Virus record (IMG/VR): IMGVR_UViG_3300036715_004471
Coordinates: 186,001-250,000 of that record
Length of the DNA: 64,000 nucleotides
Strand: one strand, 5' to 3'
How positions within the stretch are numbered: position 1 is the first letter of the stretch; each line of letters begins with the position of its first letter. Shown here one piece after another: positions 9,423-62,371 of this stretch. The notes under the pieces were generated by a model, which was not told where the DNA came from, ran no database searches, and saw only the letters and a program-made list of their open reading frames with translations. A program made the translations under genes and the position numbers.

Positions 9423-9797
9423 TTATTTTTCTCCGGGTAATTTAGGCTCAAATGGTCCTTTAATAGTATCTGTAATTTGTAATGTCTTTTCTAAATCATC
9501 AACCAATTTTTCAGCCCATGAAACTAAAGTTTTATCAATTTTCGATATATCCACGTTTTCTACATCATAATAAGCAACTAAAGTAGCAGCAATTTTCCAT
9601 AAATCTTTATGAACATTTTCACTCATCTCTTGAAATGAATATTGTGCTTGTTCTTTCTTATTTGTAAAAGGCGTTAAATTGCGTTTTTCATCTATAGCTG
9701 ATTCTACAGCTTTTGCTAATTTATTCATACCTTGTTCTTTAGCTTCATCAGCTTGTAATTTTATTTTATTATATACGGAGTTTTTTAATATAATCAT
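9423..9797 (-). CDS. Small helical hypothetical protein (124 aa)
   Basis: ATGA overlap with the spike gene stop; charged and helical. Confidence 0.6.
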   Translation of the reverse strand: MIILKNSVYNKIKLQADEAKEQGMNKLAKAVESAIDEKRNLTPFTNKKEQAQYSFQEMSENVHKDLWKIAATLVAYYDVENVDISKIDKTLVSWAEKLVDDLEKTLQITDTIKGPFEPKLPGEK

Positions 9798-48203: not shown

Positions 48204-49217
48204 TTAGGCACCGATTACGACAGACTTACGACCAGCAGCAACACCGCGAGGGTTGACGATGGCGATACCAATTTCTTCGCTTACTACCCAACCAAGCTTC
48301 AATTGCTTTGGCTCGTCGGCTGGAAGAACTTCGATATCTTGTCTAATTGGCATAACACCAACGAACTCAGGATCGGCAGCTCCGTAGATGGTTCCTGGTG
48401 GAACAATCTTGCTTACCATGATGTCAGTACCCCAGATGTGAGCATAAAGACCGGTTTGTAGAACTTCTCTCATTGTGACAGGATCGAAATCACCACCACC
48501 AACGCCTTGTCCACCACCGCTACCCCACTTTAGAATATCAGTGAATTCATTGATATTCATGAAGTACTTAGTTATAACCAAGTCCCAACGATCGATTTGT
48601 TGCTTGATTTCAACAAGGTCTCTCTTCAAAAGACCGGCATCAGCGATGTCAGTTAGGGTGTTTTCAACAGAAGCTGCGGCATCAAGTGCTGCGAAAATGT
48701 TGGCATCTTCTTGAGCCATGATTTCTTGACGAGCCTTCTGTACAGATCTGTCAATTACATTGAATCTACGACGTCTAACTTCGTTAATTCTGACAGTTGG
48801 GTTTGCGTAGATTTCGAAGGTAGGTACTACTACTCTATCACCGAATACTCTGGATTCTGGACCAGTACCGTTAGAGGAAATAACAACGGCTGAAACATCG
48901 ATATCTCTATCATATGTTGGTTGAGCACCTTGAGGTAGAGGATCTACAACTAAGGCTCTACGTGCGATACCATGGTAATCCAAGTTTCTACGAATTGGGT
49001 TTGCCATAGCTTGAGCTAGAGCAATTTTACCGTCTTGAGTCATAATAGCACGAGAGATCAACTCGTCGCGTCTGTCATCACTCAAGGCTACTTGACCGGC
49101 TAATCCCATATTAGCTGGTTGATTCTCTTCCAAAATTGCTGCATACTTAACTAATTGCTGCAACATATCCTTCAAAGAGGATGCGTTCATTGCGCCTTGG
49201 TTGTTGAACATATTCAT
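48204..49217 (-). CDS. Major capsid protein (HK97-like fold)
   Basis: IALAQAMANPIRRNLDY...VVVPTFEIYANPTV...QKARQEIMAQEDANIFAAL...GWVVSEEIGIAIVNP; strong RBS AGGAG; follows a cement gene and is followed by a terminator. Confidence 0.85.
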   Translation of the reverse strand: MNMFNNQGAMNASSLKDMLQQLVKYAAILEENQPANMGLAGQVALSDDRRDELISRAIMTQDGKIALAQAMANPIRRNLDYHGIARRALVVDPLPQGAQPTYDRDIDVSAVVISSNGTGPESRVFGDRVVVPTFEIYANPTVRINEVRRRRFNVIDRSVQKARQEIMAQEDANIFAALDAAASVENTLTDIADAGLLKRDLVEIKQQIDRWDLVITKYFMNINEFTDILKWGSGGGQGVGGGDFDPVTMREVLQTGLYAHIWGTDIMVSKIVPPGTIYGAADPEFVGVMPIRQDIEVLPADEPKQLKLGWVVSEEIGIAIVNPRGVAAGRKSVVIGA

Positions 49218-50155: not shown

Positions 50156-51409
50156 TTATAATCCGTCTGATAAATCTTTTTCTAGATCAGCAACTTCATC
50201 ATCAATGCTTTTTGGTTTACCTGGTGCTTTACCTTTTCCATTTGTTGGAGCAGATGGTGCTTCAGTAGCTTTTTCTCCAGTTAATTCCGCAGTATCAGCA
50301 GCCGCGTCCTGTATTTTTTGTTGAGCAGATTTCTCAATAGATTCTGCGTTTTTTAATAGAGATACCATTTCAGCAACAGATTTTTTGTAAGGAGCGATAG
50401 CTCTAACTACATCATCAAAATCATCTGCTACTAGTCCTTTTCCACCATGAAAAATTTGAGTTTTATCAACCAAAGATGACATAAAACCCTTATCTTCTAT
50501 TTGTCTAGCTTTATAGCTTTCAGAAGAAAAATTCTTTTCTACAGCCACAATGTATGGCAACATGTTGCTAGCTGCTGATTTTAATGTTCCATAAGCTTTA
50601 ACTACTGAATTAGTTGCCGGAGCTTTAGACAATGCTATTAAATCCTTAGCAGTTCTTGGTCTTTCCAGATCAGTAATAAGTGGCTCTACTTTATCGTATA
50701 AATCATGAAAACTAACTAACTTACTTTTAAAATCTTGTACCATATCTTTGAATTCTGATTTGTAGTCATACCCAACTCCCCATGAAGCACTGGCAGTTAA
50801 CAAATCATCAATTTCTGCAATCAACTTATTATGATTTTTATCAAAACCTTCATTGATAAAAGACATGTGTTGTTGTACGTATAATGATCCTAAAAGAATT
50901 GGAATGGCAATTAATACGGCAGTTTGAACGAAAGCTTTCTTTTGTAATTGTGGTTGCGCAACTTGCATCAAACAAGTATCGGCTAAAGCTCTAAGCTTAT
51001 CTTCACTTCTATTATCTAGATCGTTACCCAATCTAACTAATGATAATATCAAATCTTTTTCAGCATATTTATGTTGTGTTAAATGACCATCTGGAATTTT
51101 ATTTACAATGTTAATAATAATGTTTTGTCTTTCTATATTATTCTCTACCAAACCATTTAGTTTATCATGAGATGGTGCGGCAATATAAGATGTAGGATGA
51201 GCATCTTCCATAATGTTCTTTTTATACTCATTTCCTTTTGCCATTTCAACTTTAATACCATAAAGCTTAGCAATATCCTCTTCACTCAAAGAATCTGCCC
51301 TATGAGTTCTTTCAAGTATTTTCTTTGCTTTTTCAGGAGCATCTTCAGAAATCAATCCCTTTTCTTGGGCTATTTTGAAAAAGTTTTCTAAAACGTTATT
51401 GTTGCTCAT
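50156..51409 (-). CDS. Putative internal head/ejection protein (417 aa)
   Basis: Lies between protease and MCP; hydrophobic helix after LQKKA; N-terminus paralogous to 55269..56381. Confidence 0.5.
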   Translation of the reverse strand: MSNNNVLENFFKIAQEKGLISEDAPEKAKKILERTHRADSLSEEDIAKLYGIKVEMAKGNEYKKNIMEDAHPTSYIAAPSHDKLNGLVENNIERQNIIINIVNKIPDGHLTQHKYAEKDLILSLVRLGNDLDNRSEDKLRALADTCLMQVAQPQLQKKAFVQTAVLIAIPILLGSLYVQQHMSFINEGFDKNHNKLIAEIDDLLTASASWGVGYDYKSEFKDMVQDFKSKLVSFHDLYDKVEPLITDLERPRTAKDLIALSKAPATNSVVKAYGTLKSAASNMLPYIVAVEKNFSSESYKARQIEDKGFMSSLVDKTQIFHGGKGLVADDFDDVVRAIAPYKKSVAEMVSLLKNAESIEKSAQQKIQDAAADTAELTGEKATEAPSAPTNGKGKAPGKPKSIDDEVADLEKDLSDGL

Positions 51410-51449
51410 TCAATTCTCTCTATGGCTGAAATTATACGATAATACCAAC

Positions 51450-52526
51450 TTATGTAGTCCTATCAGCTACATCATCAATGAAGTAGTCGACAATTTGCTT
51501 TTTAGATCCAAAATATCTTGGCAGCCAAATCATGGGTGATTCGGGACTGGAATGATTATATTGAACAATTCTATCTTTGACAACTTGAAATGCTGGAGAA
51601 CTTTTAATAAGACTCTCTTTCCCGTCTAAACCATCATATACTGTTTTAGCAAAATTGACTAACATATATTCTATAGAGCCAGAATTATTAGTTACTCTTT
51701 CCATCCAAAGAGAATCTCCAACATTGTATTTCTCTGGAGCATAACCAGATTTAACTGGAAACTTCTTTTGTTTAGATACATTGACTGGAATAGCACTTTG
51801 AGATGATTGATCAATCGGCTCTCCCTTCTGCATTGTTCCGTCAAGTGCGTTAGGTCTATTTAAGAATTTGTTAACTACATCGCCGGCTACCACGAGCCCG
51901 GCAGACGCCAAAGCAACCTTAAAAATCCAACTTAAAACCCTGGTTAAAATAAATGCTGTTCTGGATTTTCTAGCACTAAACATTTCAAAAAATCCAGCCT
52001 CTTTTTTAAAGGCTCCACTTTGATAACTAATCATTGCAATCTTAACGAATTTAGCATCTCTTATCATTTTAGATGCAGATTTAGTTTTAGATGCTTGATC
52101 AGCCTCATCTTGAGTGGCAGGCGTGTAATTTTCTTGAACAGCTTCTTGCACAAAAGAATCTACTTGAGAAGAAGAAACTGGTTTATCACCAACAGTTACA
52201 GATTTAATCTTACTCCAAATAGAATTAATTATATTTTTAACATTGATATTGAAAACTCTCATTGATAATCCAATAAGCGCTCCTAACCAACCTAATCCCA
52301 TACTAGAAAAAGCAACAGAAATAACACCAGGTCCTAAAATATTGATTAAACTGCCTACTTTATCTTCTGGATTAACGTGACCGCTTACATAGTTCTTAAC
52401 TTTTTCTGTAAGTGTCGCCACCATACCACCAACTTGAGCTTGCTTAAATAGCTGCTCATCTTTTAAGATGGTTTCTACAATAATGCTATCAACGTAGAAA
52501 TTTATTTCGCTACTATTACTTCTCAT
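51450..52526 (-). CDS. Putative internal head/ejection protein with hydrophobic helices (358 aa)
   Basis: GVISVAFSSMGLGWLGALIGL and LSWIFKVALASAGLVVAG segments; ATGA overlap. Confidence 0.5.
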   Translation of the reverse strand: MRSNSSEINFYVDSIIVETILKDEQLFKQAQVGGMVATLTEKVKNYVSGHVNPEDKVGSLINILGPGVISVAFSSMGLGWLGALIGLSMRVFNINVKNIINSIWSKIKSVTVGDKPVSSSQVDSFVQEAVQENYTPATQDEADQASKTKSASKMIRDAKFVKIAMISYQSGAFKKEAGFFEMFSARKSRTAFILTRVLSWIFKVALASAGLVVAGDVVNKFLNRPNALDGTMQKGEPIDQSSQSAIPVNVSKQKKFPVKSGYAPEKYNVGDSLWMERVTNNSGSIEYMLVNFAKTVYDGLDGKESLIKSSPAFQVVKDRIVQYNHSSPESPMIWLPRYFGSKKQIVDYFIDDVADRTT

Positions 52527-54085
52527 TGTTTACCTAGGGCTGCTTGAAAATTAGCCATTAATGATTGAACATCTCTTAAGTTTTGAGAATAAATAGAATT
52601 TGGACCCAAATATTGAGCCTCAACTAATGATTTCTGTTCACCATTTAATGTAACTCTATCTTGAGAGTATTGAGTTCTTGCAAATTCATTATAGAAGGCT
52701 CCCAAAACTTTTCCAACCTCTACTATTACTTGTTGTAATGCATATATAAATTGCAAGCCATTATTACCAGCAGGTGGTCTAAGCCAGGCGGCAGCCTCTT
52801 GTACGTTTCTAGTTATTCTGAAATTTTGTTGACTTCCTGTTAAAGTCAAAGAAGATGCTGTAGTCATAGCTTGCAAAGCTGTACCCATAGCACCAATAGC
52901 AGATTGAGCATTATCATGAGAAGTTATACGTACATATAAGGTAAAGAAATTCTTAATTCTGTTGAAATCTATATCTTGAGGATCAAGTGGCAAAGTTTGA
53001 ACCATTTGCTCCATGATTTGACCAGTTACTGATCTATCAGGCGCTCCGCCTCCACCTTGAGGGCTCATAAAGTAATGTTTATTGCTGACGTTTGAGTCTA
53101 CAGATGAACCAATAGAACAAGCCTTGCCCCAAGGATCAGTAAATGCTGGTCCTAATTGAGAAATTTTGTTCAAATAGAAACTGTATTTTTTAGTGTCATC
53201 GGGAGAAGCTGCTGTCCTAGCAAGATTATAAGCCCTCTTATATAAAACATTGACAATGTTACAGTGGTTTGCTTCTGGATCCGTAAACTTATTGTGAGTT
53301 TGTCCAGAAACTATTGTGGCTTCAGGCGCCTGTCTCATCCAAGAATTCAATGATTCCTTACTTGATAAATCCTTAGCTGTCAAAACCAATGGACCTTTGT
53401 CAGTATAAGGATTATTGACATCGAAAACCTTAGTTCCAAAACTATCAACAACTGTATCAAATGGCATTTCATTTGGTTTATCTGGTCTAGATTTTGGTGC
53501 TCTAGATAAGCCGGAATCAGGCTTGATAGCATTAACTGAATCTATTAACTTACCAATCATTACTTCTAAAACTCTGCCTTGAACATCACCATTTCTTTTT
53601 AGTTCTTGAGCTTTGTCTTGTAAATGAGAAACGTATTTTATCAAAATTGGCAAATGAGTATAAAAATCAGCCGTAGTCCATTTCCTAGATGTTTCATCTC
53701 TTGAAACGTTCACGGAAACAGGTGCTAATTTATTTCTTTCCTCTTCATTTAAAGTATTTGATTCCGCTTCTGGGTAAACAACACGAATACCATCAATTTT
53801 GATTTTATTGGTAGCCATGAATTGTAATAACCTACCTAATGACTGAAGTTGGTTGACTCCTAAATCAATAGATCCTGCTGTGTCAGCAGAAATATTAATT
53901 GGCTCGACAGCCCCTGCAAATTCTCTAGATAATTTGCTAACTAGTTTTTTAGCAACATCATTTGGTGATAATGGTTGTTCACCGCGTGGGGATGCCGTTG
54001 GCGCCTCTTGAGCATTCTTCTTCAAAATCTTATTAAGAAGACCTTGATAAATAGCTTCATCATATATTTCGTGTAGAAAAGACAT
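52523..54085 (-). CDS. Putative internal head protein (520 aa)
   Basis: Short N-terminal helix ending LKKNA, then a Pro-rich linker. Confidence 0.5.
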   Translation of the reverse strand: MSFLHEIYDEAIYQGLLNKILKKNAQEAPTASPRGEQPLSPNDVAKKLVSKLSREFAGAVEPINISADTAGSIDLGVNQLQSLGRLLQFMATNKIKIDGIRVVYPEAESNTLNEEERNKLAPVSVNVSRDETSRKWTTADFYTHLPILIKYVSHLQDKAQELKRNGDVQGRVLEVMIGKLIDSVNAIKPDSGLSRAPKSRPDKPNEMPFDTVVDSFGTKVFDVNNPYTDKGPLVLTAKDLSSKESLNSWMRQAPEATIVSGQTHNKFTDPEANHCNIVNVLYKRAYNLARTAASPDDTKKYSFYLNKISQLGPAFTDPWGKACSIGSSVDSNVSNKHYFMSPQGGGGAPDRSVTGQIMEQMVQTLPLDPQDIDFNRIKNFFTLYVRITSHDNAQSAIGAMGTALQAMTTASSLTLTGSQQNFRITRNVQEAAAWLRPPAGNNGLQFIYALQQVIVEVGKVLGAFYNEFARTQYSQDRVTLNGEQKSLVEAQYLGPNSIYSQNLRDVQSLMANFQAALGKQ

Positions 54086-54092
54086 AACACCC

Positions 54093-55262
54093 TTAAATTG
54101 TTGCTATTTTAGGCTTGATGATCTTATTAAAGATATCTACAGCAGCTGACTCTGCATTACCAGCATAGTTAACCATCCACTTAATATATTCATCTTTGCT
54201 ACTTAAAGCTTTGAGTGGAATATAGTTTAATTTCTTATTTGGTAAACCAGGTGCAGGATACGTTACATCAATTGGTATCTTAACAGCATCTGATTTACTC
54301 ATTTGTATTTCTTGAGGAGTTAAAGTATCTTTATTACTGCCCTGCGCAGAGTATCTATCAAACGATCTTTTACCCTCTATAGTTGGTCTGAATTCTGGTC
54401 TAGCTAAAACTTGTTGTCTAAAATGACCATATAACTTAGTAATAGCTTTCAAATGCTTTGAAATAGCAGATGCCCTTACAGCTTTTTGTACAGTAGGTAG
54501 TTTAACTAATCCATTTTCTAGTTTATAACCCGTCAAAGCTTGATTAAACTTTTGCCAATTATCGAAAGTATATATGTTATTTTCTAATCCAAAGTCACCT
54601 TCTAATTGTAACAAAGCATAAGCAAAACCCATAATGTTTCTCAAAGCATTATCAGTTCTAAAATCCCATTTACCATCTACTACAAACTCTTTAGTACTTG
54701 CACCAATTCTACGAAGTGTGTCCATAACAACATCTAATTCGTAAATATCAGTTTGTGTTTTTTGTTTACCAGGAAGTGTTGTGACTTGTTTATTAGTTGT
54801 CCACTCAACACCTTTCTTATCTTCATCTAATCCGCCCAAATATTGTTCAGCAATGAAATCATTGAAGCTCTTTTTGGCGGTCTTCTGCTCTCCTGTAGCT
54901 CCTGGTTGTTGAGCATCTCTTGGTTTAGCTGCCATTGTTCCAGATTCTGCATCTGTAATAACAGCTTGAGCAAGAGTTTGCATAGCCGTTTGCATTTCTT
55001 TAACAGCAGCAATGGCGTTAGCAATTTGTTGTGGAGAATTACCAGGCTGTACTTTACCTTTATTCAAAGCAGGTACTCTTCTTCTTATTTCGGGTCCAAG
55101 CTTTCTAGCTAAAGGTACCCCAGAAGACGGGGTAGCAGGAGTAGGGGCGGCAGGCGCGCTAGGATCAGCAGGTTTGGTTTTTTTAGGACTTTTTCTTACT
55201 GGAACAGGAACATCACCTGGCTCATCGGCATATTTTTTAATCAAATCTAATTTCTCAGACAT
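54093..55262 (-). CDS. Putative internal head protein (389 aa)
   Basis: IKKYA then a Pro-rich linker; VDGKWDFRTDNAL resembles a peptidoglycan-binding motif. Confidence 0.5.
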   Translation of the reverse strand: MSEKLDLIKKYADEPGDVPVPVRKSPKKTKPADPSAPAAPTPATPSSGVPLARKLGPEIRRRVPALNKGKVQPGNSPQQIANAIAAVKEMQTAMQTLAQAVITDAESGTMAAKPRDAQQPGATGEQKTAKKSFNDFIAEQYLGGLDEDKKGVEWTTNKQVTTLPGKQKTQTDIYELDVVMDTLRRIGASTKEFVVDGKWDFRTDNALRNIMGFAYALLQLEGDFGLENNIYTFDNWQKFNQALTGYKLENGLVKLPTVQKAVRASAISKHLKAITKLYGHFRQQVLARPEFRPTIEGKRSFDRYSAQGSNKDTLTPQEIQMSKSDAVKIPIDVTYPAPGLPNKKLNYIPLKALSSKDEYIKWMVNYAGNAESAAVDIFNKIIKPKIATI

Positions 55263-55268
55263 ATTTCC

Positions 55269-56381
55269 TCAATCTATCCAGTTAGATTTGAATTCGCTGA
55301 AAGAAGGGGTAGTAATCTTCTTTAGATTTCCCAACAATATAGATGCATTTTGTTCTTTTTCTTCGTCTTCCATGCCCTCTAATTGTGCTTTAACACCTTG
55401 TACTTGATTCATTTTAGCAGAAATCCATTGATTAGCTTGTTTTTTTTCAGCATCTTCTAAATCCGGATCTGTAGCTATTTTAGCTTGAAATCCTTTCAAT
55501 ACAGAAAAAGCATTTCCTAACCACTTGTTAAGAATGTTTAATTGCGAAGCTACTTTAGGGGCGGCGGCAGCCGGTTCGGATAAAGCTTTCTGTATTGTAC
55601 CTAAAGCAGTATTGGCTTTAGCAAATAATGATGTCATTCCTGCCCAAGTTTCATTAGGCACCCCGCCAATAATTGTTCCTGGCTTAAAAGCACTATAGAA
55701 ACTATCTAATCCTAATTTGATCATTGGCAGAATTCGTTCTAATGAGGAAGGATTGCCAGCGTTACTAATGGCTTGATTAATATAATTAATTAAAGTGTCT
55801 TTACCAGAAGCGATTGGTCTAGTTAGGAAGCTTTGATCTTCGTGTAATACAAAAATAGTTTGAACAGAATTCAACACAATATTCAAATTTTGAACTATTG
55901 TTGGATTGGCGGCTTGTGCTAAAACAATTTTAACAGATCTTAAAATATCTTTATTTGAAGCTAATTTACCAGTAGGTTTCTTTTCAGTAAGTTTAATGCC
56001 AGCAAGGTGTTGATCAATAATCGTTTCGATAACGTTATCTCCATCCATATCAGTTAATTTATGAGAACCTTTTGGATGAGCCGCATCAACTAAATCTTCG
56101 TCCTTCTCTTTGGAAGTTTCATAAAGAGTTTGTGCACTCTTATAAGACATGAATTTAGACTCAACATCATCAGCATATTTATCTAAACCTGATGCTCTTA
56201 AACCTGAACATAGCTTCATAATATTTTCTGTTAGGTTAACAGAAATAGATAAATCAGTCTCATTAAGAGAGGCAATTTTAGACAAAGATTTTACTGGAGG
56301 AAGCCAGCCCTTATCTCTTGCTACTCTTTCTAAAGAGCGCATGGTAACAGAATCTTCGAATTTTACATGCTTAAAAGTCAT
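55269..56381 (-). CDS. Putative internal head protein (370 aa)
   Basis: GAGG RBS; N-terminus paralogous to the 417-aa protein. Confidence 0.5.
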   Translation of the reverse strand: MTFKHVKFEDSVTMRSLERVARDKGWLPPVKSLSKIASLNETDLSISVNLTENIMKLCSGLRASGLDKYADDVESKFMSYKSAQTLYETSKEKDEDLVDAAHPKGSHKLTDMDGDNVIETIIDQHLAGIKLTEKKPTGKLASNKDILRSVKIVLAQAANPTIVQNLNIVLNSVQTIFVLHEDQSFLTRPIASGKDTLINYINQAISNAGNPSSLERILPMIKLGLDSFYSAFKPGTIIGGVPNETWAGMTSLFAKANTALGTIQKALSEPAAAAPKVASQLNILNKWLGNAFSVLKGFQAKIATDPDLEDAEKKQANQWISAKMNQVQGVKAQLEGMEDEEKEQNASILLGNLKKITTPSFSEFKSNWID

Positions 56382-56455
56382 TGGTGAGCCTCAAAAAGTG
56401 CTATGATTTTATATATAGAATGGTTCTACTATATGAAAAGATATGCAGTTACGAC

Positions 56456-56623
56456 TCAATAGAATATAAGATAGGTTATGATTTTGTCAGCTGTCACATC
56501 AAATGGTAACAGTGAGTTTATCAAAGGATCACCATCTATATAGGTTTTATTTTCTCTAATTGAAATATTGATATGATGTGAGCCTACACGAAATTTTACA
56601 GTCTATATATCACGTGATCTCAA
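56456..56623 (-). pseudogene. Small ORF interrupted by one TAG (pseudogene, readthrough or sequence error)
   Basis: TAAGGA RBS, TTG at 56623, TAG at 56605-56603, then 48 open codons to TGA. Confidence 0.3.
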
Positions 56624-56631
56624 ATTGTTCC

Positions 56632-57318
56632 TTAATACCAAAGAACTTCAATCATTGGGTTCATAGTTGTAGGGGGAGCTGTGACCATACCTACAGCGGG
56701 ATGAATAATACTAGGTCTACGAGTAGTTAAAAATCCAACTTCACTAACATACAAATTAGCTTTAACAGGATATTGCTGATTGGTTTCATATTGATCAGTT
56801 TGAAAAAACATTCTATTAAACCAAACAGTTACTCTACCAGATCCCTGAGTGCTATCATCTCCGGGAATATTGGCAACTTGATAAGTATAATTCACAATTG
56901 TTTTAATACCATTTGGTTGCCCTGTACCCATGATATCTATATTTAAAGGCGTACCAGCCAAAAAAGTAATAACTCCGTTAACTGGATTCAAAGTAACTTT
57001 AACTGTAGATGAAAAACTGGTTGAAACAATATTTGGTCTTCTTAATTCGGCTTTAATATCAATTGGTGTAACTAATATACCACCAGATGCCACTCCAACC
57101 GCAGGCACAATTACTTCTTCATTCCACGAAACATTGGTAAAAGCCCTGGTTTTAATATCATCAATAATGCCAAGAGGCGCCGTGCCATTACTGACAGTTG
57201 CCATTACTTGGTTTCCTAATACTGTTAATTCTGCTATTTGTCCCGGCTGAAATTCAGCTGAAGGATCGCAAATAAAACTGGCAGGAAGAGTATTTCCAAC
57301 TTGAACTAATCTAAGCAT
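56632..57318 (-). CDS. Second cement/decoration-like protein (paralog of 49336..50007)
   Basis: Shared motifs MLRLVQVG/MALKLLQPG, PLGIIDD/PLMLCDD, GSGRVTVW/GSGKVTLW. Confidence 0.55.
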   Translation of the reverse strand: MLRLVQVGNTLPASFICDPSAEFQPGQIAELTVLGNQVMATVSNGTAPLGIIDDIKTRAFTNVSWNEEVIVPAVGVASGGILVTPIDIKAELRRPNIVSTSFSSTVKVTLNPVNGVITFLAGTPLNIDIMGTGQPNGIKTIVNYTYQVANIPGDDSTQGSGRVTVWFNRMFFQTDQYETNQQYPVKANLYVSEVGFLTTRRPSIIHPAVGMVTAPPTTMNPMIEVLWY

Positions 57319-57375
57319 GAGTATCCTTTGTGTACACCACTCTATACAACTCTCATACTTAATATAACAGTTGAA

Positions 57376-57780
57376 TTAATCTCTTTCCTCTTCAAAATCG
57401 TGTAATTCTATACCCATATCTCCATCAGATACTTCTAATGTATCCTCTACATCAACATCAAGTAAATTATTTGCTTCACCATCATCTGATAAATTCATTG
57501 GATGACCATGGTCCTTCAAATTATTAACCATTTTTTCAGGAGTTAATCCATTGGTATGACGATCACTTGGGACTTGGGTTTTGTTAGCAATCTTTTCCAA
57601 AATGTTAACAATTTTCTCGGCATTTCTACTCATACCAAGATTTTCAAAAATCTCGGCAGCTGAATTTAAATAATCCACAGCCTGCTCAAGATTATCACAA
57701 TCTTGTTGAGTAGCTTGCTTCACCAATTGGCGATGCATACCAGAGATCAATTCTTCTTCAAAAACACTTTTTTTGATCAT
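57376..57780 (-). CDS. Small head-associated protein, helical-module family (134 aa)
   Basis: Paralog of 57791..58021; acidic tail. Confidence 0.6.
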   Translation of the reverse strand: MIKKSVFEEELISGMHRQLVKQATQQDCDNLEQAVDYLNSAAEIFENLGMSRNAEKIVNILEKIANKTQVPSDRHTNGLTPEKMVNNLKDHGHPMNLSDDGEANNLLDVDVEDTLEVSDGDMGIELHDFEEERD

Positions 57781-57790
57781 GGTTTCTGCC

Positions 57791-58021
57791 TTATTTAACT
57801 GAAGTCTTACCTAATTGTTTTGATAAACCTTGCAAGACTTCCGTTACCTCAGCTGCCTCACTATACATACCTGCTTTGTCAAATAATGACGCAGCAGCGT
57901 TTAAGTAATCGGCAGCTTTGGAGATCTTATCAAAGCTGAATTTGTTTTCCAATTGGTTAGAAACCAATTTAGTTTCCATCGAACGATAAATTTCGTCTTC
58001 AAAGCTGCCGGTCTTAAACAT
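57791..58021 (-). CDS. Small head-associated protein, helical-module family (76 aa)
   Basis: FEDEIYRSMETKLV and AADYLNAAASLFDKAGM match the neighbour's FEEELISGMHRQLV and AVDYLNSAAEIFENLGM. Confidence 0.6.
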   Translation of the reverse strand: MFKTGSFEDEIYRSMETKLVSNQLENKFSFDKISKAADYLNAAASLFDKAGMYSEAAEVTEVLQGLSKQLGKTSVK

Positions 58022-58023
58022 GA

Positions 58024-58725
58024 TTATTTCTTCTTAGCAAAAGGGAATGGTTTCTTGGAACCTGAACCCGAAGATTTTGAACTGCTGCTGGAACTAGAAG
58101 AAGATGGCTTCTTTTTTGCTCTAGCATCATTAGAATCTGATTTCTTTCCAGAAGAACTGCTCTTCTTTTTATCATCTTCCTTCTTTTTCTTGGCTCTGGC
58201 ATCATTAGAATCTTTGCTGCTCTTCTTAGGATCGCTCTTCTTCTTAGAATCACTTTTCTTCTTTTCATCCTTCTTCTTGGCTTCAACAACCAAGGAAGCT
58301 AGTTTCAAGCTTAATGAGGATCCCTTTTCAAGACCTGCACGGTCAAGAGCTGCGGAAGCAGTCAAAAGACTGTCAATTGCAACATCTAAAGCAGAGGATT
58401 CTAGATCTTCTGAATCATCGGCACAAGACTTATCTTCTTCTTCCATGTCGGAAGCATTGTGCTCGTCAACAGCACCATCAAAGGCGCTGCTAGAATCTTC
58501 AGAATCGTCCTTCTTCTTTTTTCTAGCATCATTATCATCATATGCGCTATGTGAATCGCTAGAACAGCCATCCTTTACGCCGTGAGTTGGACATATAGTG
58601 TCATTCGCAAAACTTTCGTCAGATGCAAATTTGTATGTACCACCGAACAATGATTGGTGAGCTTGGCTCTTTAATACTGCATCCATTGTTGCAGCAACAA
58701 AATCTGATACGCTTTTATTTCTCAT
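58024..58725 (-). CDS. Low-complexity Lys/Ser/Asp-rich head protein; start revised to ATG 58725
   Basis: AGAGGA RBS; acidic middle, very basic C-terminus with NDAR(A/K)KKK repeats. Confidence 0.65.
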   Translation of the reverse strand: MRNKSVSDFVAATMDAVLKSQAHQSLFGGTYKFASDESFANDTICPTHGVKDGCSSDSHSAYDDNDARKKKKDDSEDSSSAFDGAVDEHNASDMEEEDKSCADDSEDLESSALDVAIDSLLTASAALDRAGLEKGSSLSLKLASLVVEAKKKDEKKKSDSKKKSDPKKSSKDSNDARAKKKKEDDKKKSSSSGKKSDSNDARAKKKPSSSSSSSSSKSSGSGSKKPFPFAKKK

Positions 58726-58750: not shown

Positions 58751-61700
58751 TTAGAACATTCTCTTGGAAGTCTTATTGAATGCTGCGGACAATAATGACC
58801 AGTCATCTTCCACTTGTGCTACGTTATTTTCACCAGAACCAAGTATTCCTACTTGAGGCATACGACCAGCTTCTTTACGCATTGTTGGGCTGTGTTTTGC
58901 AACTACTCTCTTCAAAGTATCGAAACTGTCGTCGTTAAACTTCATGATTTCATCAACTTGTGAGGCGATAGCGATCTTATCGCTGTGGCATAAACCACGG
59001 TCAACCATATCGTAAGCTACTTCGTAAGCTCTTGCAAGCTTGACTTTGTATTTGTTCAACTCATCTTCCATTTGAGCCTTGACATGTTCTTTGACTAATT
59101 CACTGGCGAATTCACCACCACCGTCAACTTGACTGAAGTATTTCTTGTAATAAGAAACAGCATCCTTATCTAGACCTTCTGATACTAGAGCATCAAGATC
59201 AGCTGGGTCAAGTTTACCTTCACTAATTAATCTGTGAATGGCTTCGGCTTCTTTACGAACCTTTGGTGGAGCTTTTGCAAGATCCATCATAGCCTTGTTA
59301 ACTTCTGAAAGGGTTTCTACATAACCCATGTTATCAGATGGCTTGGTATCAAGACCCTTGACTTGACCGTCGGCTAGATTATCGGCTGTATCCATAATGT
59401 CGAAGAATTTAGCTCTAGACATATCTTGAAGTTGTCCGTCATCTTGCTTACCAGTTGGATCAAAAGCGAACTTTCCTAAAGCTTCAGCAGCCAACTTAGC
59501 ACGCATTACGTTGCGCCTTGATCTGTTATCAAAACCAGCAGTTACTTGAACTGTTGTTCCTGGCTTGACATTCAAGTCTTTCAACTCTTCTTTGTTAGCC
59601 ATTAGATCATTGTCATCAGCAAGTGCTGAACCATCAAAAACTTGATCTTGACCGTCAGGACCTTCTTCACCCAAATCTGGGAAACTTTCATCTTCTCCTA
59701 AGCCTTCGCCCAAATCTTCGGAACCGACAGAACCTTCATCCAAATCTTCAAGAGTTGGATCCGCATCACCATCTGTCATGTGAGCGTTATCATCATCGTC
59801 CATCATTTCTTTGACGGAACCTAAATCCCTATTTGTATCTTCAATAAGAGCCATTAAGCTGTCATCGCCACTACCACTCATAGATTCTCCCTCAGCCTCA
59901 GCAAGTGCTTCAAGTTCTGCTTCGATTTCAGCACGTTTGACGATAGCTTTGGTGCCACGAGCATATTTAACGAAGGCAGTCATTAGTCTGAAACCATCTG
60001 CAACGGCAGTCTTGGCTTCGTTTGTTGCATCTTCTAAGATAGAATTAACTAGATCTTCATTGGAGCCAGTAACCGCTCCCTTGTCATATAATCCTACAAT
60101 AGTGCTCAATTCTTCTTCGTGATCGTTAAGCTCAGCAATTACTTCCTTCATGGCGCTAGTCATAGACTCATTCAATTCGCCTCTCAAGGAATTCATTTGC
60201 TCTGTGCTAAAGTCTGAGGCAGTAGCACCCATTTCGGCACCACTAGCACCAATGTCAGCGCCCATTTCAGCTTGTTCACCAGTCAAAGCTCTTACAGCCT
60301 CTACTAGATCAGAGGAAAGGTCTCTAACTTTTTCAGCCAACTCAACTGCGGATTCTTTTGGATCACCAGTTTTACCAGTATCTTCTCCAGTAGGAGCAGC
60401 ACCGGCACTAGGATCAACTGGAGGGGCAGCGGGAACTGCGGCGCCAGCAGAAGGATCAGCAGGAGGTGGGGTTTGAGCATTTTTTACCAAATCACGGACT
60501 CTATCAGCACCGTAAACTTTAACTTTTTCAAGTAATCTTTGACCGAATTCAGCGGTATTAATGGTATCGTACATCATTTCAGAACGACCACCGGAAAGTT
60601 CTCTAACAGAGGCAGACAATAATAGTTTGTCTCCTAAACGAATTTCCCATGCGCTGTTTTCTAGATCTCTGGTTCCATCATTTCTAGAAGCTCTAACGAA
60701 TCTACCATGTAGAGTATTAGCTCTACGTAGCATTTCTTTACGCTTTAATTCATCAGAAGTGTCTGCTGATTCTGGGCTTGGGTGTAAGCCGTCTACTTTG
60801 CCTACATCTGGGAATGGCTTTTGACCATGCATGTGCTTATCATCTTCGTAAGCCATGTGACCCTTATCAGCTGGATACTTTGGTTTACCCGGAGTTGGAG
60901 CGCCCGGATTCTTATCGTCTCCATTTAAGAAGTAAGCCTTTTTCTCTTCCAAAGCTTGCTTGGCAAGGTTTACAATTGCTTGACGACGCAAAGCCTTTTC
61001 TTCTGCATCGGCACGAGCAAGCATTCTCTTACGCTCTAGCTCGGAGACTCCGGAGCTTTCAACACCAGGGTGCATACCATCAACTGGTCCTATATCTGGG
61101 AATGGCTTTTGTCCATGAAGATGCTTGTCCTCTTCATAAGCCATGTGACCTGGATCCTTTGGATATTTAGGTTGACCAGGGGTAGGTTCTTCCGTTCCTT
61201 GGTAGTAACCTTGTTTATTCATTTCTCTTGAAGACATAGTTTCCTCGTGTATATTTGTAGACTTTGCTAACTTATCCAAACTTTGTTTCATATGATTCAA
61301 TTTTGCTTCGATTGCTGCTGTAACTTCACGCAGCTCTTCAATTGAAGTCGTTTCAATTTTAGATGAAGCAAATCTTGCATGTGGTGGAGCTAATCCAGAA
61401 TCAGTATTAGGAGTTTCTATCTCATCATTTATAGAGATAGAACCTGAAGATTGATTAAATGCAAGATCATTAGTATCTTTTTCAGAATTTTCTACAGAAC
61501 TATTTATATCCTGTAATTTTCTGAATGCTGTCTCGATATCTTTTTTGAATTCTTCGAAGGCACTTTGAGATGATAATTTGCCAAATTCCTTAGATTTATT
61601 CTCAAGATAAGTATTCAGAGTATGAGCAGAAGCAATAATGTGTTTAATATTTGCTTTAGGATCGGCGCCATTAACTACAATGGATAATTCAATTGGATTC

Positions 61701-62371
61701 AAATCCACATTGATTTCACCATAACCAGTCTTACGCCTCATGTGTTCACAAAAATCTGCCTCAGCTCTAGCTACAGTAGCACAATCACTACAAATGGCTC
61801 TACCTACAGCGGTACCCATAGATACGCAGTTAGAATAACCAGTAGAAACCTTTCTAGCTAAATCTGGATAATTATGTTTGTCTAAAGCACAAAGAGCAAT
61901 TACTCTTTTCAAATTACGATCATAATAAGTATCAACAATAAAACCTCTTACATGATCGACTGAGCTTGATTTATGATCTATGCAAAGAGGCTTGTGAACC
62001 CATTTTTTATAAGCTTTTACTAATTCTTCTTCCGGAAAAATATCTCCATTAGAATTCTTATATGGCTTGATGCTTGGATCATTAGATGTCCAGCGCCAAG
62101 TGCCACCTCTTTTATCCCAACCAACTTGTACTTGTTCTCCTCTAGCATTTAGCTTGAGAGTACCATCATCGTTGAGAGAAGATGCCTCAGCAGCATGCAT
62201 CATAACAGCTGAGAAATACAAAAAGTCTTCAGCCTTAGGAGCTATCTTCTTAAGATTAGCGGCTGTTTTTCTAAAATTTTCCAATACTTCAGCACTGACT
62301 GCCGGAATACAAGATTCTGTATTCTCAATTCTGCTGATTTCAATAAGTTCACCCAATTTGACAAATGGCAT
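58751..62371 (-). CDS. Prohead protease-scaffold fusion (HK97/assemblin-type protease domain)
   Basis: N-terminal domain with PLCIDH (His), CVSMG (Ser) and IELSIVVNGADP; remainder acidic and coiled-coil, scaffold-like. Confidence 0.75.
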   Translation of the reverse strand: MPFVKLGELIEISRIENTESCIPAVSAEVLENFRKTAANLKKIAPKAEDFLYFSAVMMHAAEASSLNDDGTLKLNARGEQVQVGWDKRGGTWRWTSNDPSIKPYKNSNGDIFPEEELVKAYKKWVHKPLCIDHKSSSVDHVRGFIVDTYYDRNLKRVIALCALDKHNYPDLARKVSTGYSNCVSMGTAVGRAICSDCATVARAEADFCEHMRRKTGYGEINVDLNPIELSIVVNGADPKANIKHIIASAHTLNTYLENKSKEFGKLSSQSAFEEFKKDIETAFRKLQDINSSVENSEKDTNDLAFNQSSGSISINDEIETPNTDSGLAPPHARFASSKIETTSIEELREVTAAIEAKLNHMKQSLDKLAKSTNIHEETMSSREMNKQGYYQGTEEPTPGQPKYPKDPGHMAYEEDKHLHGQKPFPDIGPVDGMHPGVESSGVSELERKRMLARADAEEKALRRQAIVNLAKQALEEKKAYFLNGDDKNPGAPTPGKPKYPADKGHMAYEDDKHMHGQKPFPDVGKVDGLHPSPESADTSDELKRKEMLRRANTLHGRFVRASRNDGTRDLENSAWEIRLGDKLLLSASVRELSGGRSEMMYDTINTAEFGQRLLEKVKVYGADRVRDLVKNAQTPPPADPSAGAAVPAAPPVDPSAGAAPTGEDTGKTGDPKESAVELAEKVRDLSSDLVEAVRALTGEQAEMGADIGASGAEMGATASDFSTEQMNSLRGELNESMTSAMKEVIAELNDHEEELSTIVGLYDKGAVTGSNEDLVNSILEDATNEAKTAVADGFRLMTAFVKYARGTKAIVKRAEIEAELEALAEAEGESMSGSGDDSLMALIEDTNRDLGSVKEMMDDDDNAHMTDGDADPTLEDLDEGSVGSEDLGEGLGEDESFPDLGEEGPDGQDQVFDGSALADDNDLMANKEELKDLNVKPGTTVQVTAGFDNRSRRNVMRAKLAAEALGKFAFDPTGKQDDGQLQDMSRAKFFDIMDTADNLADGQVKGLDTKPSDNMGYVETLSEVNKAMMDLAKAPPKVRKEAEAIHRLISEGKLDPADLDALVSEGLDKDAVSYYKKYFSQVDGGGEFASELVKEHVKAQMEDELNKYKVKLARAYEVAYDMVDRGLCHSDKIAIASQVDEIMKFNDDSFDTLKRVVAKHSPTMRKEAGRMPQVGILGSGENNVAQVEDDWSLLSAAFNKTSKRMF

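What the first reader, a model, noticed from the sequence alone, without database searches (positions are those of the whole stretch)
50156..58725. Shared ~35-aa helical module on unrelated head proteins: possible capsid-targeting tag
A pattern like L-x2-(A/L)-x2-(L/F)-(D/E/R)-x2-G-(L/M)-x3-A recurs: AVDYLNSAAEIFENLGMSRNAEKI (134 aa), AADYLNAAASLFDKAGMYSEAAEV (76 aa), AIDSLLTASAALDRAGLEKGSSL (233 aa), ENIMKLCSGLRASGLDKYADDV (370 aa), more weakly ILSLVRLGNDLDNRSEDKLRALAD (417 aa) and NKIKLQADEAKEQGMNKLAKAV (124 aa, 9423..9797). It usually lies near a K-x-A site. Together they suggest a modular loading system: the module docks cargo on the scaffold and the protease then removes it. This would be analogous to the T4 capsid-targeting sequence but domain-sized, and could be useful for engineering.
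Basis: partly seen in the sequence, partly recalled or inferred. Interest (0 to 1): 0.75.

Follow-up and report, generated by a model that had tools for sequence, protein, structure and literature searches.

The report
Paralogous helical-hairpin head proteins of a megaphage
Three neighbouring small genes in the head-assembly block of an uncultivated 446-kb phage share a real, widespread but unnamed 70-residue N-terminal helical hairpin; the other three proposed copies are not copies, and its role as a cleavable capsid-loading tag is plausible but untested.

Summary
All six quoted peptides are in the sequence, but they do not form one significant profile. In a leave-one-out test only the 76-aa and 134-aa proteins recover each other.

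- **76 aa and 134 aa:** certain paralogs (BLASTP 2e-11; profile comparison 99.3%).
- **233/260 aa:** a probable third paralog, with the module split by an acidic insert. It aligns colinearly (P 3e-4, above all 150 column shuffles).
- **370 aa and 417 aa:** paralogs of each other (95.5%) over a different N-terminal region of about 130 aa. Only a 13-column stretch of the 370-aa hairpin weakly resembles the module.
- **The quoted 417-aa segment and the 124-aa protein:** not supported.

The module is a long helix, a glycine turn and a short helix, with a TPR-like sequence. It starts at or next to the first residue in nearly all family members seen. C-terminal extensions run from 0 to 324 aa. The family has 737 clusters in metagenomes, no Pfam or PHROG family, and no homologue in phage G or any GenBank phage.

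Complex prediction gives weak support for hairpin-to-hairpin pairing of p76 with p134.

My best reading is a co-assembly domain of small prohead-core proteins encoded next to the protease-scaffold gene. Targeting and proteolytic removal remain untested.

The parts
57376..57780 (-). p134 (134 aa). Residues 1-70 (57571-57780) are the N-terminal hairpin module; the quoted peptide is at 57610-57681. Residues 71-134 hold the conserved D-x-H-T-K-G-L-T-P-E-K-M-V...H-G motif and an acidic tail (net charge -15) that ends in FE-E/D-E.
   Evidence: BLASTP against p76, E 2e-11. 65 metagenomic homologues. AF2 model has helices 4-47 and 51-67, with pLDDT 85-87 over residues 31-60. Charges.
57791..58021 (-). 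p76 (76 aa): the module alone. The quoted peptide is at 57845-57916.
   Evidence: hhalign against the p134 family 99.3%, E 7.5e-21. Orthologs in other loci carry C-terminal extensions of up to about 194 aa.
58024..58725 (-). p260, whose true start is Met28, giving 233 aa. Helix 1 lies at 58633-58725. An acidic low-complexity insert with [DES]ND[AV][KR] repeats lies at 58396-58626 (net -18). The conserved hairpin lies at 58237-58410, with the quoted peptide at 58312-58380. A basic K/S-rich tail lies at 58027-58254 (net +17).
   Evidence: Ortholog alignment. Spliced colinear hhalign to the module, P 3e-4, 0 of 150 shuffles. 76 of 80 p260 orthologs are the main sub-threshold hits of the module HMM. 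Charges; repeat motif.
55269..56381 (-). p370. The conserved N-terminal 160 aa lie at 55902-56381 and comprise helix 12-23, a hairpin at residues 50-89 (56115-56234, quoted peptide 56163-56228), and a disordered region carrying the invariant AHP-x-GS (56061-56087) and KKPTGKL (55962-55982) motifs. The C-terminal helical bundle (55272-55904) is hypervariable.
   Evidence: hhalign against p417 95.5%, E 1.4e-8. Conservation profile. AF2 mean pLDDT 78, above 90 for residues 160-370. Only 13 columns match the module.
50156..51409 (-). p417. The N-terminal 135 aa (51005-51409) are homologous to the p370 N-terminal region and contain FFKIAQEKGLIS (51347-51382) and EDAHP (51185-51208).
   Evidence: Shuffle tests are not significant: 30 of 150 for residues 1-45 and 114 of 150 for residues 110-160.
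58751..62371 (-). p1206, a prohead protease-scaffold fusion. The protease part is at about 61616-62272. A segment at 59264-59431 weakly resembles the p370 AHP...VET region. An internal 80-aa tandem repeat lies at 60947-61186 and 60644-60898.
   Evidence: phrog_18299 head maturation protease, E 2.6e-14. Phage G gp19 matches the N-terminal part (E 8.5e-33) and gp21 matches the C-terminal part (E 5.8e-6). hhalign against p370 P 1.7e-4, 0 of 100 shuffles. Repeat 56% identical, E 2e-31.
9423..9797 (-). p124, which lies far from the head block. I do not count it as a copy of the module.
   Evidence: It has orthologs. The module HMM aligns NKLAKAVE to module positions 28-36, not to the Gly turn. Leave-one-out rank is 45 of 682. 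It resembles the first helix of p370 weakly (P 9e-4).
48204..49217 (-). Major capsid protein, which marks the end of the head-assembly block.
   Evidence: phrog_2522, E 1e-77. 54% identical to phage G gp27.

Best explanation
The finding merges three different things.

1. **A real, unnamed protein family.** It is a roughly 70-residue N-terminal alpha-helical hairpin (long helix, Gly turn, short helix) whose hairpin sequence is TPR-like. Three adjacent genes just downstream of the protease-scaffold fusion gene carry it: p260/233, p76 and p134. These are tandem paralogs, not unrelated proteins. p76 is the bare domain, p134 adds an acidic tail, and p260 has the domain split by an acidic insert and adds a strongly basic K/S-rich tail.
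2. **A second paralog pair, p370 and p417.** They share a different conserved N-terminal region: a helix ending in KG-hydrophobic, then disordered conserved motifs E-x-AHP, G-x-VE(T/N) and K-x-P-x-G-x-L. Divergent C-terminal domains follow.
3. **Generic amphipathic-helix look-alikes.** These are the quoted p417 segment and p124.

**Inferred mechanism.** The hairpins pack against one another as homo- or hetero-oligomeric helical bundles. The small proteins would then co-assemble with each other, and probably with the scaffold core, inside the prohead. Whatever C-terminal part they carry would ride in with them. Homology, N-terminal position, conserved gene order and variable C-termini are shown. 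Oligomerisation has weak computational support. Prohead location, scaffold contact and proteolytic removal are inferred only.
For: - **p76 and p134:** BLASTP 2e-11; hhalign 99.3%.
- **p260:** colinear profile match over 67 columns, P 3e-4, above all 150 column shuffles. 76 of 80 p260 orthologs are the sub-threshold hits of the module HMM, in two colinear stretches. Reciprocal best non-self hit is p134.
- **p370 and p417:** 95.5%, E 1.4e-8; reciprocal HMM hits.
- **Gene order:** protease-scaffold, p260, p76, p134, p228, p370..., p417, decoration-like protein, capsid protein, conserved in 86 related loci.
- **Module position:** it starts within the first 10 residues in 156 of 166 locus ORFs, and within the first 7 residues in 148 of the 150 best of 737 metagenomic clusters, in proteins of 69-390 aa.
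- **TPR-like hairpin:** TPR_12 repeat proteins match module positions 25-54 eight to nine times. The best PDB sequence hits are TPR proteins, none significant.
- **Fold:** the AF2 model is a helical hairpin.
- **Pairing:** complex prediction of p134(1-75) with p76 gave weak support. Score 0.40 against a best control of 0.00. The mark was reached by 58 of 80 solved complexes and 2 of 110 mismatched pairs, but at 0.60 or under by only 7 of those 80 and by both mismatches that passed. The interface is formed by the two hairpins.
- **Tails:** p260 +17 and p134 -15.
Against: - There is no experimental or proteomic evidence that any of these proteins is in proheads or virions.
- Phage G and every GenBank phage lack the family.
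- The p260 link has only 39.6% hhalign probability, and the p76 to p370 link is marginal (P 0.004).
- Helical hairpins pack promiscuously in structure predictors. The complex score falls in the range the tool itself calls more often wrong than right without a strong prior.
- The AF2 monomer model is only moderately confident (mean pLDDT 67.7).
- Position in a head block does not prove a structural role. An assembly chaperone or a regulator of the protease would fit equally well.
Confidence: 0.5

Rival explanations
1. The module is a portable capsid-targeting tag that docks otherwise unrelated cargo proteins on the scaffold, and the prohead protease removes it during maturation. This would be a domain-sized analogue of the T4 capsid-targeting sequence.
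For: - The module sits at or next to the N-terminus in nearly all family members, with C-terminal parts of 0-324 aa, including DUF5661 in one relative.
- The genes lie beside the protease-scaffold gene.
- p370 has a conserved N-terminal 160 aa with invariant motifs in a predicted disordered stretch, then a hypervariable, confidently folded C-terminal bundle. This is the layout of a propeptide plus a mature cargo.
- [DES]ND[AV][KR] repeats lie in the linkers of p260 and of p134 orthologs and could be processing sites.
- There is precedent for long propeptides on paralogous head proteins of giant phages, with a proposed targeting role (PMC10052503).
Against: - The carriers are paralogs, not unrelated proteins.
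- p76 has no cargo at all.
- Only three, at most four, genes in 446 kb carry the module.
- The six quoted copies fail a leave-one-out profile test.
- These proteins share no short N-terminal peptide.
- No cleavage motif is known for this protease lineage, and K-x-A is explained by composition.
Confidence: 0.2
2. The hairpin is a generic TPR-like protein-binding element. These small proteins would be non-structural assembly chaperones or adaptors, for example holding the capsid protein, portal or protease before assembly. They would not end up in the particle and would not load cargo.
For: - The module hairpin is sequence-similar to TPR_12 repeats, and p134 hits ComR_TPR weakly.
- The best PDB sequence hits are Rap phosphatase TPR, FliS (a flagellin chaperone) and alpha-SNAP. 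All are non-significant.
- One relative (L036) carries true TPR repeats upstream of a partial module.
- p76 is only a binding domain.
Against: - There is a single hairpin, not a tandem TPR array.
- No Pfam TPR model reaches its cut-off on the window proteins.
- The strongly basic tail of p260 and the hypervariable tail of p370 fit packaged internal proteins better than chaperones.
- The strictly conserved position next to the scaffold gene fits prohead-core components.
Confidence: 0.2
3. Apart from the p76/p134 pair, the resemblances, including p260, are chance matches between amphipathic, Ala/Leu/Lys/Glu-rich helices. No wider module exists.
For: - Leave-one-out ranks are 45 to 371 of 682 for four of the six copies.
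- The literal pattern has 0 matches, and the loose pattern is at the chance level.
- hhalign probabilities for p260 and p370 against the module are below 40%.
Against: - The p260 match is colinear over two separated segments, beats all 150 column shuffles, is reciprocal, and recurs in 76 of 80 orthologs.
- p260 lies directly next to p76 and p134, as expected for a tandem duplication.
Confidence: 0.1

Closest known systems
T4 capsid-targeting sequence of internal proteins IPI-III and Alt (Mullaney and Black 1996, as cited in PMC10052503)
   Same: An N-terminal element shared by several proteins encoded with the head genes. It is proposed to bring variable C-terminal parts into the prohead core.
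   Different: The T4 signal is a peptide of about 10 residues on otherwise unrelated proteins, and gp21 cleaves it off after L/I-x-E. Here the element is a folded 70-residue hairpin on paralogs. No shared short N-terminal peptide was found, and cleavage is unknown.
Paralogous head and ejection proteins with long propeptides in giant phages SPN3US, phiKZ and 201phi2-1 (PMC10052503, PMC5694885)
   Same: Families of paralogous head-block proteins in a very large phage, with conserved N-terminal regions of 70-160 aa and divergent C-terminal parts. A targeting role for such N-terminal regions has been suggested.
   Different: No sequence relationship was found (no PHROG or Pfam hits). The capsid lineage is different (phage G-like). 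Cleavage was shown by mass spectrometry for SPN3US but has not been tested here.
P22 scaffolding protein C-terminal helix-turn-helix, the coat-binding domain used to load cargo into P22 particles (PMC9965877, PMC9962691)
   Same: A small helix-turn-helix element that mediates incorporation into a procapsid and that can carry fused cargo.
   Different: The P22 element is C-terminal and basic, and it binds coat protein. The module here is N-terminal and slightly acidic (net -1 to -3). Its partner is unknown, and the only computational hint is pairing with its own paralog.
Tetratricopeptide repeats (Pfam TPR_12 and related)
   Same: The helix-Gly-turn-helix sequence pattern (A-x-x-Y-L-x-x-A-x-x-I-F-x-x-x-G-x-x-x-x-A) is TPR-like. 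Genuine TPR_12 proteins match the module profile repeatedly.
   Different: There is one hairpin preceded by a long helix, not a tandem array. No TPR model passes its cut-off on the window proteins.
T4 small prohead core proteins gp67 and gp68 (recalled from memory, not tested by sequence)
   Same: Small proteins of about 80 and 140 aa, encoded beside the protease and scaffold genes, that are minor components of the prohead core.
   Different: No detectable sequence similarity (no PHROG hit). The comparison rests only on size and gene position.

Membership tests
T4-type capsid-targeting sequence | Located at the extreme N-terminus of the carrier | tested here: met
   The module starts within the first 10 residues in 156 of 166 locus ORFs. 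Most later starts look like over-called upstream start codons; one is a true internal partial copy in L036. It starts within the first 7 residues in 148 of the 150 best cluster representatives; the other two are TPR-repeat proteins.
T4-type capsid-targeting sequence | A short shared peptide carried by otherwise unrelated proteins | tested here: not met
   The carriers are paralogs. A helix-1-only HMM does not find p370, p260 or p417 among the top 25 N-termini of 682 genes.
T4-type capsid-targeting sequence | Removed by the prohead protease at a defined motif | not testable with these tools
   No proteomics exists for this lineage. Phage G lacks the family. Candidate motifs ([DES]ND[AV][KR], AHP, KKPTGKL) are only conserved, not shown to be cut.
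T4-type capsid-targeting sequence | Necessary and sufficient to package a foreign protein | not testable with these tools
   This needs a fusion and packaging experiment.
TPR repeat proteins (Pfam clan TPR) | Score above the gathering cut-off of a TPR model | tested here: not met
   The only hit is ComR_TPR at 18 bits, against a cut-off of 26.5, on p134. There is none on p76, p260, p370 or p417.
TPR repeat proteins (Pfam clan TPR) | Tandem array of 34-residue helix-turn-helix repeats | tested here: not met
   The AF2 model has a single hairpin (H4-47, H51-67). No ORF holds more than one module.
Scaffolding-protein coat-binding helix-turn-helix (P22 type) | C-terminal, basic helix-turn-helix that binds coat protein | tested here: not met
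   The module is N-terminal with net charge -1 to -3. Binding to the capsid protein was not tested.
Giant-phage paralog families with propeptides (SPN3US gp53/gp54 type) | Sequence homology to those families | tested here: not met
   No PHROG or Pfam family was hit. tblastn of p134 and p370 against 50,697 GenBank phages found nothing.
Giant-phage paralog families with propeptides (SPN3US gp53/gp54 type) | Paralogous head-block proteins with a conserved N-terminal region and a divergent C-terminal region | tested here: met
   p260/p76/p134 and p370/p417. In p370 the N-terminal 160 aa are 50-80% conserved against 17-31% for the C-terminal part.

The most novel reading that the evidence does not exclude
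The N-terminal hairpin would be a true domain-sized loading and co-assembly signal, used across a large clade of uncultivated phage G-like megaphages. Hairpins would bundle with each other and with the scaffold core, carrying very different C-terminal payloads into the prohead: none, acidic tails, protamine-like basic tails, DUF5661, or inserts of up to about 300 aa. The protease would release them at conserved linker motifs. p370 and p417 would use a second, related N-terminal loading region.
Probability: 0.2. Interest if true: 0.7.

Novelty: new variant of a known kind. Interest (0 to 1): 0.4.

Why it matters
Megaphages with genomes over 400 kb are known almost entirely from metagenomes, and nothing is known about how their very large heads are built or loaded.

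This work defines an unannotated domain family with a fixed N-terminal position and a fixed genomic place beside the protease-scaffold gene. The family has 737 clusters at 50% identity and no Pfam, PHROG, PDB or GenBank-phage relative.

If the domain proves to be a co-assembly or loading signal, it would give a handle for finding the internal and ejected proteins of uncultivated megaphages, and a possible tag for loading engineered capsids. If it does not, the result still corrects the initial claim: the similarity is tandem paralogy plus a generic TPR-like pattern, not one tag spread over six unrelated head proteins.

Tried and rejected
0 matches for the literal form, and 3 against 2.56 expected for the loose form. 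It is no use as a test.
- **Two-sequence and deep module HMMs against all ORFs of the genome:** no further significant carrier. The best extra hit is a 73-aa ORF outside the window, E 0.023.
- **A shared short N-terminal peptide (M-x-K-x-x-x-F-E-D/E-E) as a T4-like signal:** a helix-1 HMM does not find p370, p260, p417, p520 or p358. Rejected.
- **K-x-A as a cleavage site near the module:** explained by Lys/Ala-rich composition, with no fixed position. Rejected as evidence.
- **p124 as a copy:** the best alignment is in another register. A relative-locus scan using p124 found nothing in viral contigs.
- **Sequence searches:** Pfam, PHROGs, PDB sequence search, Foldseek against PDB and BFVD, and ESM Atlas gave no informative relative for p134 or p370.
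- **Phage G and GenBank phages:** no homologue, so published phage G virion proteomics (PMC12484599) cannot be used.
- **DNA-level search of the p134-p260 region against phages:** no match.
- **A weak hit of one long p134 ortholog to the T7 capsid assembly protein:** E 0.007, below the cut-off. I did not rely on it.
- **Complex prediction:** only p134 N-domain with p76 was run (weak support). Module with scaffold and module with capsid protein were not tested because the cap was one job.
Full report
**Context**

The window is bases 186001-250000 of a single 446,541-bp virus record with 38.7% G+C. Its major capsid protein (48204-49217, minus strand) matches phrog_2522 (E 1e-77) and is 54% identical to gp27 of Bacillus phage G. 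The phage therefore belongs to the phage G-like megaphages.

The finding spans a run of minus-strand genes between a 1206-aa protein and the capsid gene. The 1206-aa protein is a protease-scaffold fusion:
- Its N-terminal part matches a head maturation protease family and phage G gp19 (E 8.5e-33).
- A C-terminal segment matches phage G gp21 (E 5.8e-6).

**The observation**

All six quoted peptides are present in the named ORFs. The 233-aa form of the third protein (start at 58725) is the true one, because every ortholog starts at the matching Met.

The pattern as written matches nothing in the genome. A loosened version gives 3 matches against 2.56 in shuffled proteins.

I built a profile from the six 24-aa segments and tested it by leaving each one out:

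| Left out | Rank of 682 genes |
|---|---|
| p76 | 6 (E 0.009) |
| p134 | 11 |
| p124 | 45 |
| p260 | 111 |
| p417 | 142 |
| p370 | 371 |

Only p76 and p134 are recovered, through each other.

**Related loci**

Homologues of p134 are common in metagenomes (65 proteins). I fetched 86 related loci. All keep the same gene order: protease-scaffold, p260, p76, p134, p228, p370, p389, p520, p358, p417, a decoration-like protein, then the capsid protein. I built ortholog alignments of 32-71 sequences per gene and compared them profile against profile.

**What is really related**

- **p76 and p134** are certain paralogs (BLASTP 2e-11; hhalign 99.3%).
- **p260** is a probable third paralog.
  - Its most conserved stretch (VAIDSLLTASAALD-x-x-G...LSLKLASLV) aligns to module helices 2-3, and its N-terminal helix aligns to module helix 1. 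An acidic low-complexity insert lies between them.
  - With the insert spliced out, the two parts align colinearly over 67 columns (P 3e-4, probability 39.6%). The score is above all 150 column-shuffled controls.
  - 76 of 80 p260 orthologs are the sub-threshold hits of the module HMM.
  - The best non-self hit of a p260 HMM in the genome is p134 (E 0.012).
- **p370 and p417** are paralogs of each other (95.5%, E 1.4e-8). The shared part is a different N-terminal region of about 130 aa: a helix ending in KG-hydrophobic, then E-x-AHP, G-x-VE(T/N) and K-x-P-x-G-x-L.
  - That hairpin matches the module over only 13 columns (0 of 150 and 2 of 150 shuffles).
- **The quoted p417 segment** is conserved within its family but unrelated to the module (114 of 150 shuffles reach its score).
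- **p124** lies far from the head block, and the module HMM aligns it in a different register.

A weak similarity also links p370 residues 86-136 to p1206 residues 981-1036 (P 1.7e-4, 0 of 100 shuffles).

**Nature of the module**

A profile of 59 diverse modules was searched against 1.84 billion cluster representatives. It found 737 clusters at E up to 1e-3, and 413 at E up to 1e-10.

- In 148 of the 150 best hits the module starts within the first 7 residues, in proteins of 69-390 aa.
- In the fetched loci it starts within the first 10 residues in 156 of 166 ORFs. Most later starts look like over-called upstream start codons, and one is a true internal partial copy in L036.
- C-terminal extensions run from 0 to 324 aa.

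The two exceptions among the 150 best hits are TPR_12 repeat proteins, which match the hairpin eight to nine times. The best PDB sequence hits are TPR-type proteins, none significant. p134 gives a sub-threshold ComR_TPR hit.

AlphaFold2 models p134 as a long helix (4-47), a turn at Gly49, a second helix (51-67), a short helix in the conserved HTKGLTPEKMV motif, and a disordered acidic tail. Mean pLDDT is 67.7, rising to 85-87 over residues 31-60. Fold searches gave nothing specific.

No Pfam or PHROG family covers any of these proteins. Phage G has no copy, and no GenBank phage has a p134 or p370 homologue.

**Architecture of the carriers**

- **p76** is the bare module.
- **p134** adds a variable linker, a conserved D-x-HTKGLTPEKMV-x-NLK-x-HG motif and an acidic tail (net -15) ending in FEDE-x-D. 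Relatives carry up to about 200 extra residues in the linker, often with ND(A/V)(K/R) followed by a basic stretch.
- **p260** has an acidic insert (net -18) with three [DES]ND[AV][KR] repeats, the only three in the genome. It ends in a K/S-rich tail (net +17).
- **Some p76 orthologs** carry C-terminal extensions of about 70-190 aa. One relative's module-bearing protein (L036) has DUF5661 plus true TPR repeats.
- **p370** has a conserved N-terminal 160 aa (50-80% majority-residue frequency) followed by a hypervariable C-terminal part (17-31%). The C-terminal part is nevertheless modelled as a confident helical bundle, with pLDDT above 90. The invariant AHP-x-GS and KKPTGKL motifs lie in predicted disordered segments.

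**Mechanism**

The design is an N-terminal conserved helical element with a variable C-terminal part, encoded beside the protease-scaffold gene. It fits proteins that are incorporated into the prohead through their N-terminal domain.

One complex prediction was allowed, and I used it for p134(1-75) with p76. The result was weak support:
- The score was 0.40 against a best control of 0.00.
- The mark was reached by 58 of 80 solved complexes and 2 of 110 mismatched pairs. At 0.60 or under it was reached by only 7 of those 80 and by both mismatches that passed.
- The interface is formed by the two hairpins.

I therefore favour a co-assembly or oligomerisation domain of small prohead-core proteins (confidence 0.5). 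A non-structural TPR-like chaperone role is the other serious rival (0.2). None of these can be separated without experiments, because no cultured phage carries the family.

**Comparison with known systems**

The closest concepts are:
- the T4 capsid-targeting sequence;
- the long propeptides on paralogous head proteins of SPN3US and phiKZ-like phages, for which a targeting role has been suggested (PMC10052503);
- the P22 scaffolding helix-turn-helix used for cargo loading (PMC9965877, PMC9962691).

The present family belongs to none of these by sequence, and it fails their defining features where those could be tested. It is a folded 70-aa hairpin rather than a 10-aa peptide. It sits on paralogs, not unrelated proteins. 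It is N-terminal and slightly acidic, not C-terminal and basic.

**Verdict**

- I rate it a new variant of a known kind, with moderate interest.

Noticed in passing
window 58751-62371 (minus strand): The 1206-aa protein fuses a prohead protease domain to a scaffold-like region; phage G encodes these as separate genes (gp19 and gp21). It also holds an internal tandem repeat of about 80 aa (residues 396-475 and 492-576, 56% identical, E 2e-31). Each copy carries GHMAYE-x-DKH-x-HGQKPFPD...DG-x-HP.
   Followed up: partly
window 58027-58626 (p260); linkers of p134 orthologs, e.g. P0022, P0026, P0029, P0064: The motif [DES]ND[AV][KR], followed by lysines, occurs three times in p260 and nowhere else in the 446-kb genome. 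It recurs in the linkers of p134 orthologs of other phages. It may be a processing or binding site.
   Followed up: partly
L002:11207-12124, L003:4155-5096, L004:3087-4061, L005:10282-11241, L007:10435-11271 and 12104-12877: Relatives carry GIY-YIG or LAGLIDADG homing-endonuclease genes between the p134, p228 and p370 orthologs. The window has none there, only a 250-bp gap at 56382-56631.
   Followed up: no
window 56632-57318 (minus strand): The 228-aa protein between p134 and p370 is very strongly conserved: 75-84% identity to the window protein in the first six loci, and 81-94% majority-residue frequency over 71 sequences. That is more than any other head-block protein here except the capsid protein. 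It has no Pfam or PHROG match.
   Followed up: no
window 51450-52526 (p358) and 50156-51409 (p417): Both proteins contain a hydrophobic stretch that looks like a membrane helix (p358 GPGVISVAFSSMGLGWLGALIGL; p417 AVLIAIPILLGSLYV). This is unusual for head-block proteins and would fit ejected, membrane-active internal proteins.
   Followed up: no
window 55272-55904 (p370 C-terminal domain): This part is hypervariable among orthologs (17-31% majority-residue frequency), yet it is modelled with pLDDT above 90 as a bundle of long helices. No informative fold match was found in PDB or BFVD.
   Followed up: partly
genome coordinates 296611-296832, minus strand (outside the window): A 73-aa ORF is the best extra hit of the module HMM in the whole genome (E 0.023; KAIENILLAKKIFTDLELQGEIRSITEVL). 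It may be a further diverged hairpin protein.
   Followed up: no
L036:3791-4939: A 382-aa protein in the p76 position combines true TPR repeats (TPR_2 E 1e-10), a partial module (HMM positions 33-68) and a DUF5661 domain (E 4e-11).
   Followed up: partly
window 48204-49217 (capsid protein): The capsid protein has about 44 N-terminal residues that are conserved in relatives and have no counterpart in the annotated phage G gp27 (282 aa). They may be a propeptide.
   Followed up: no
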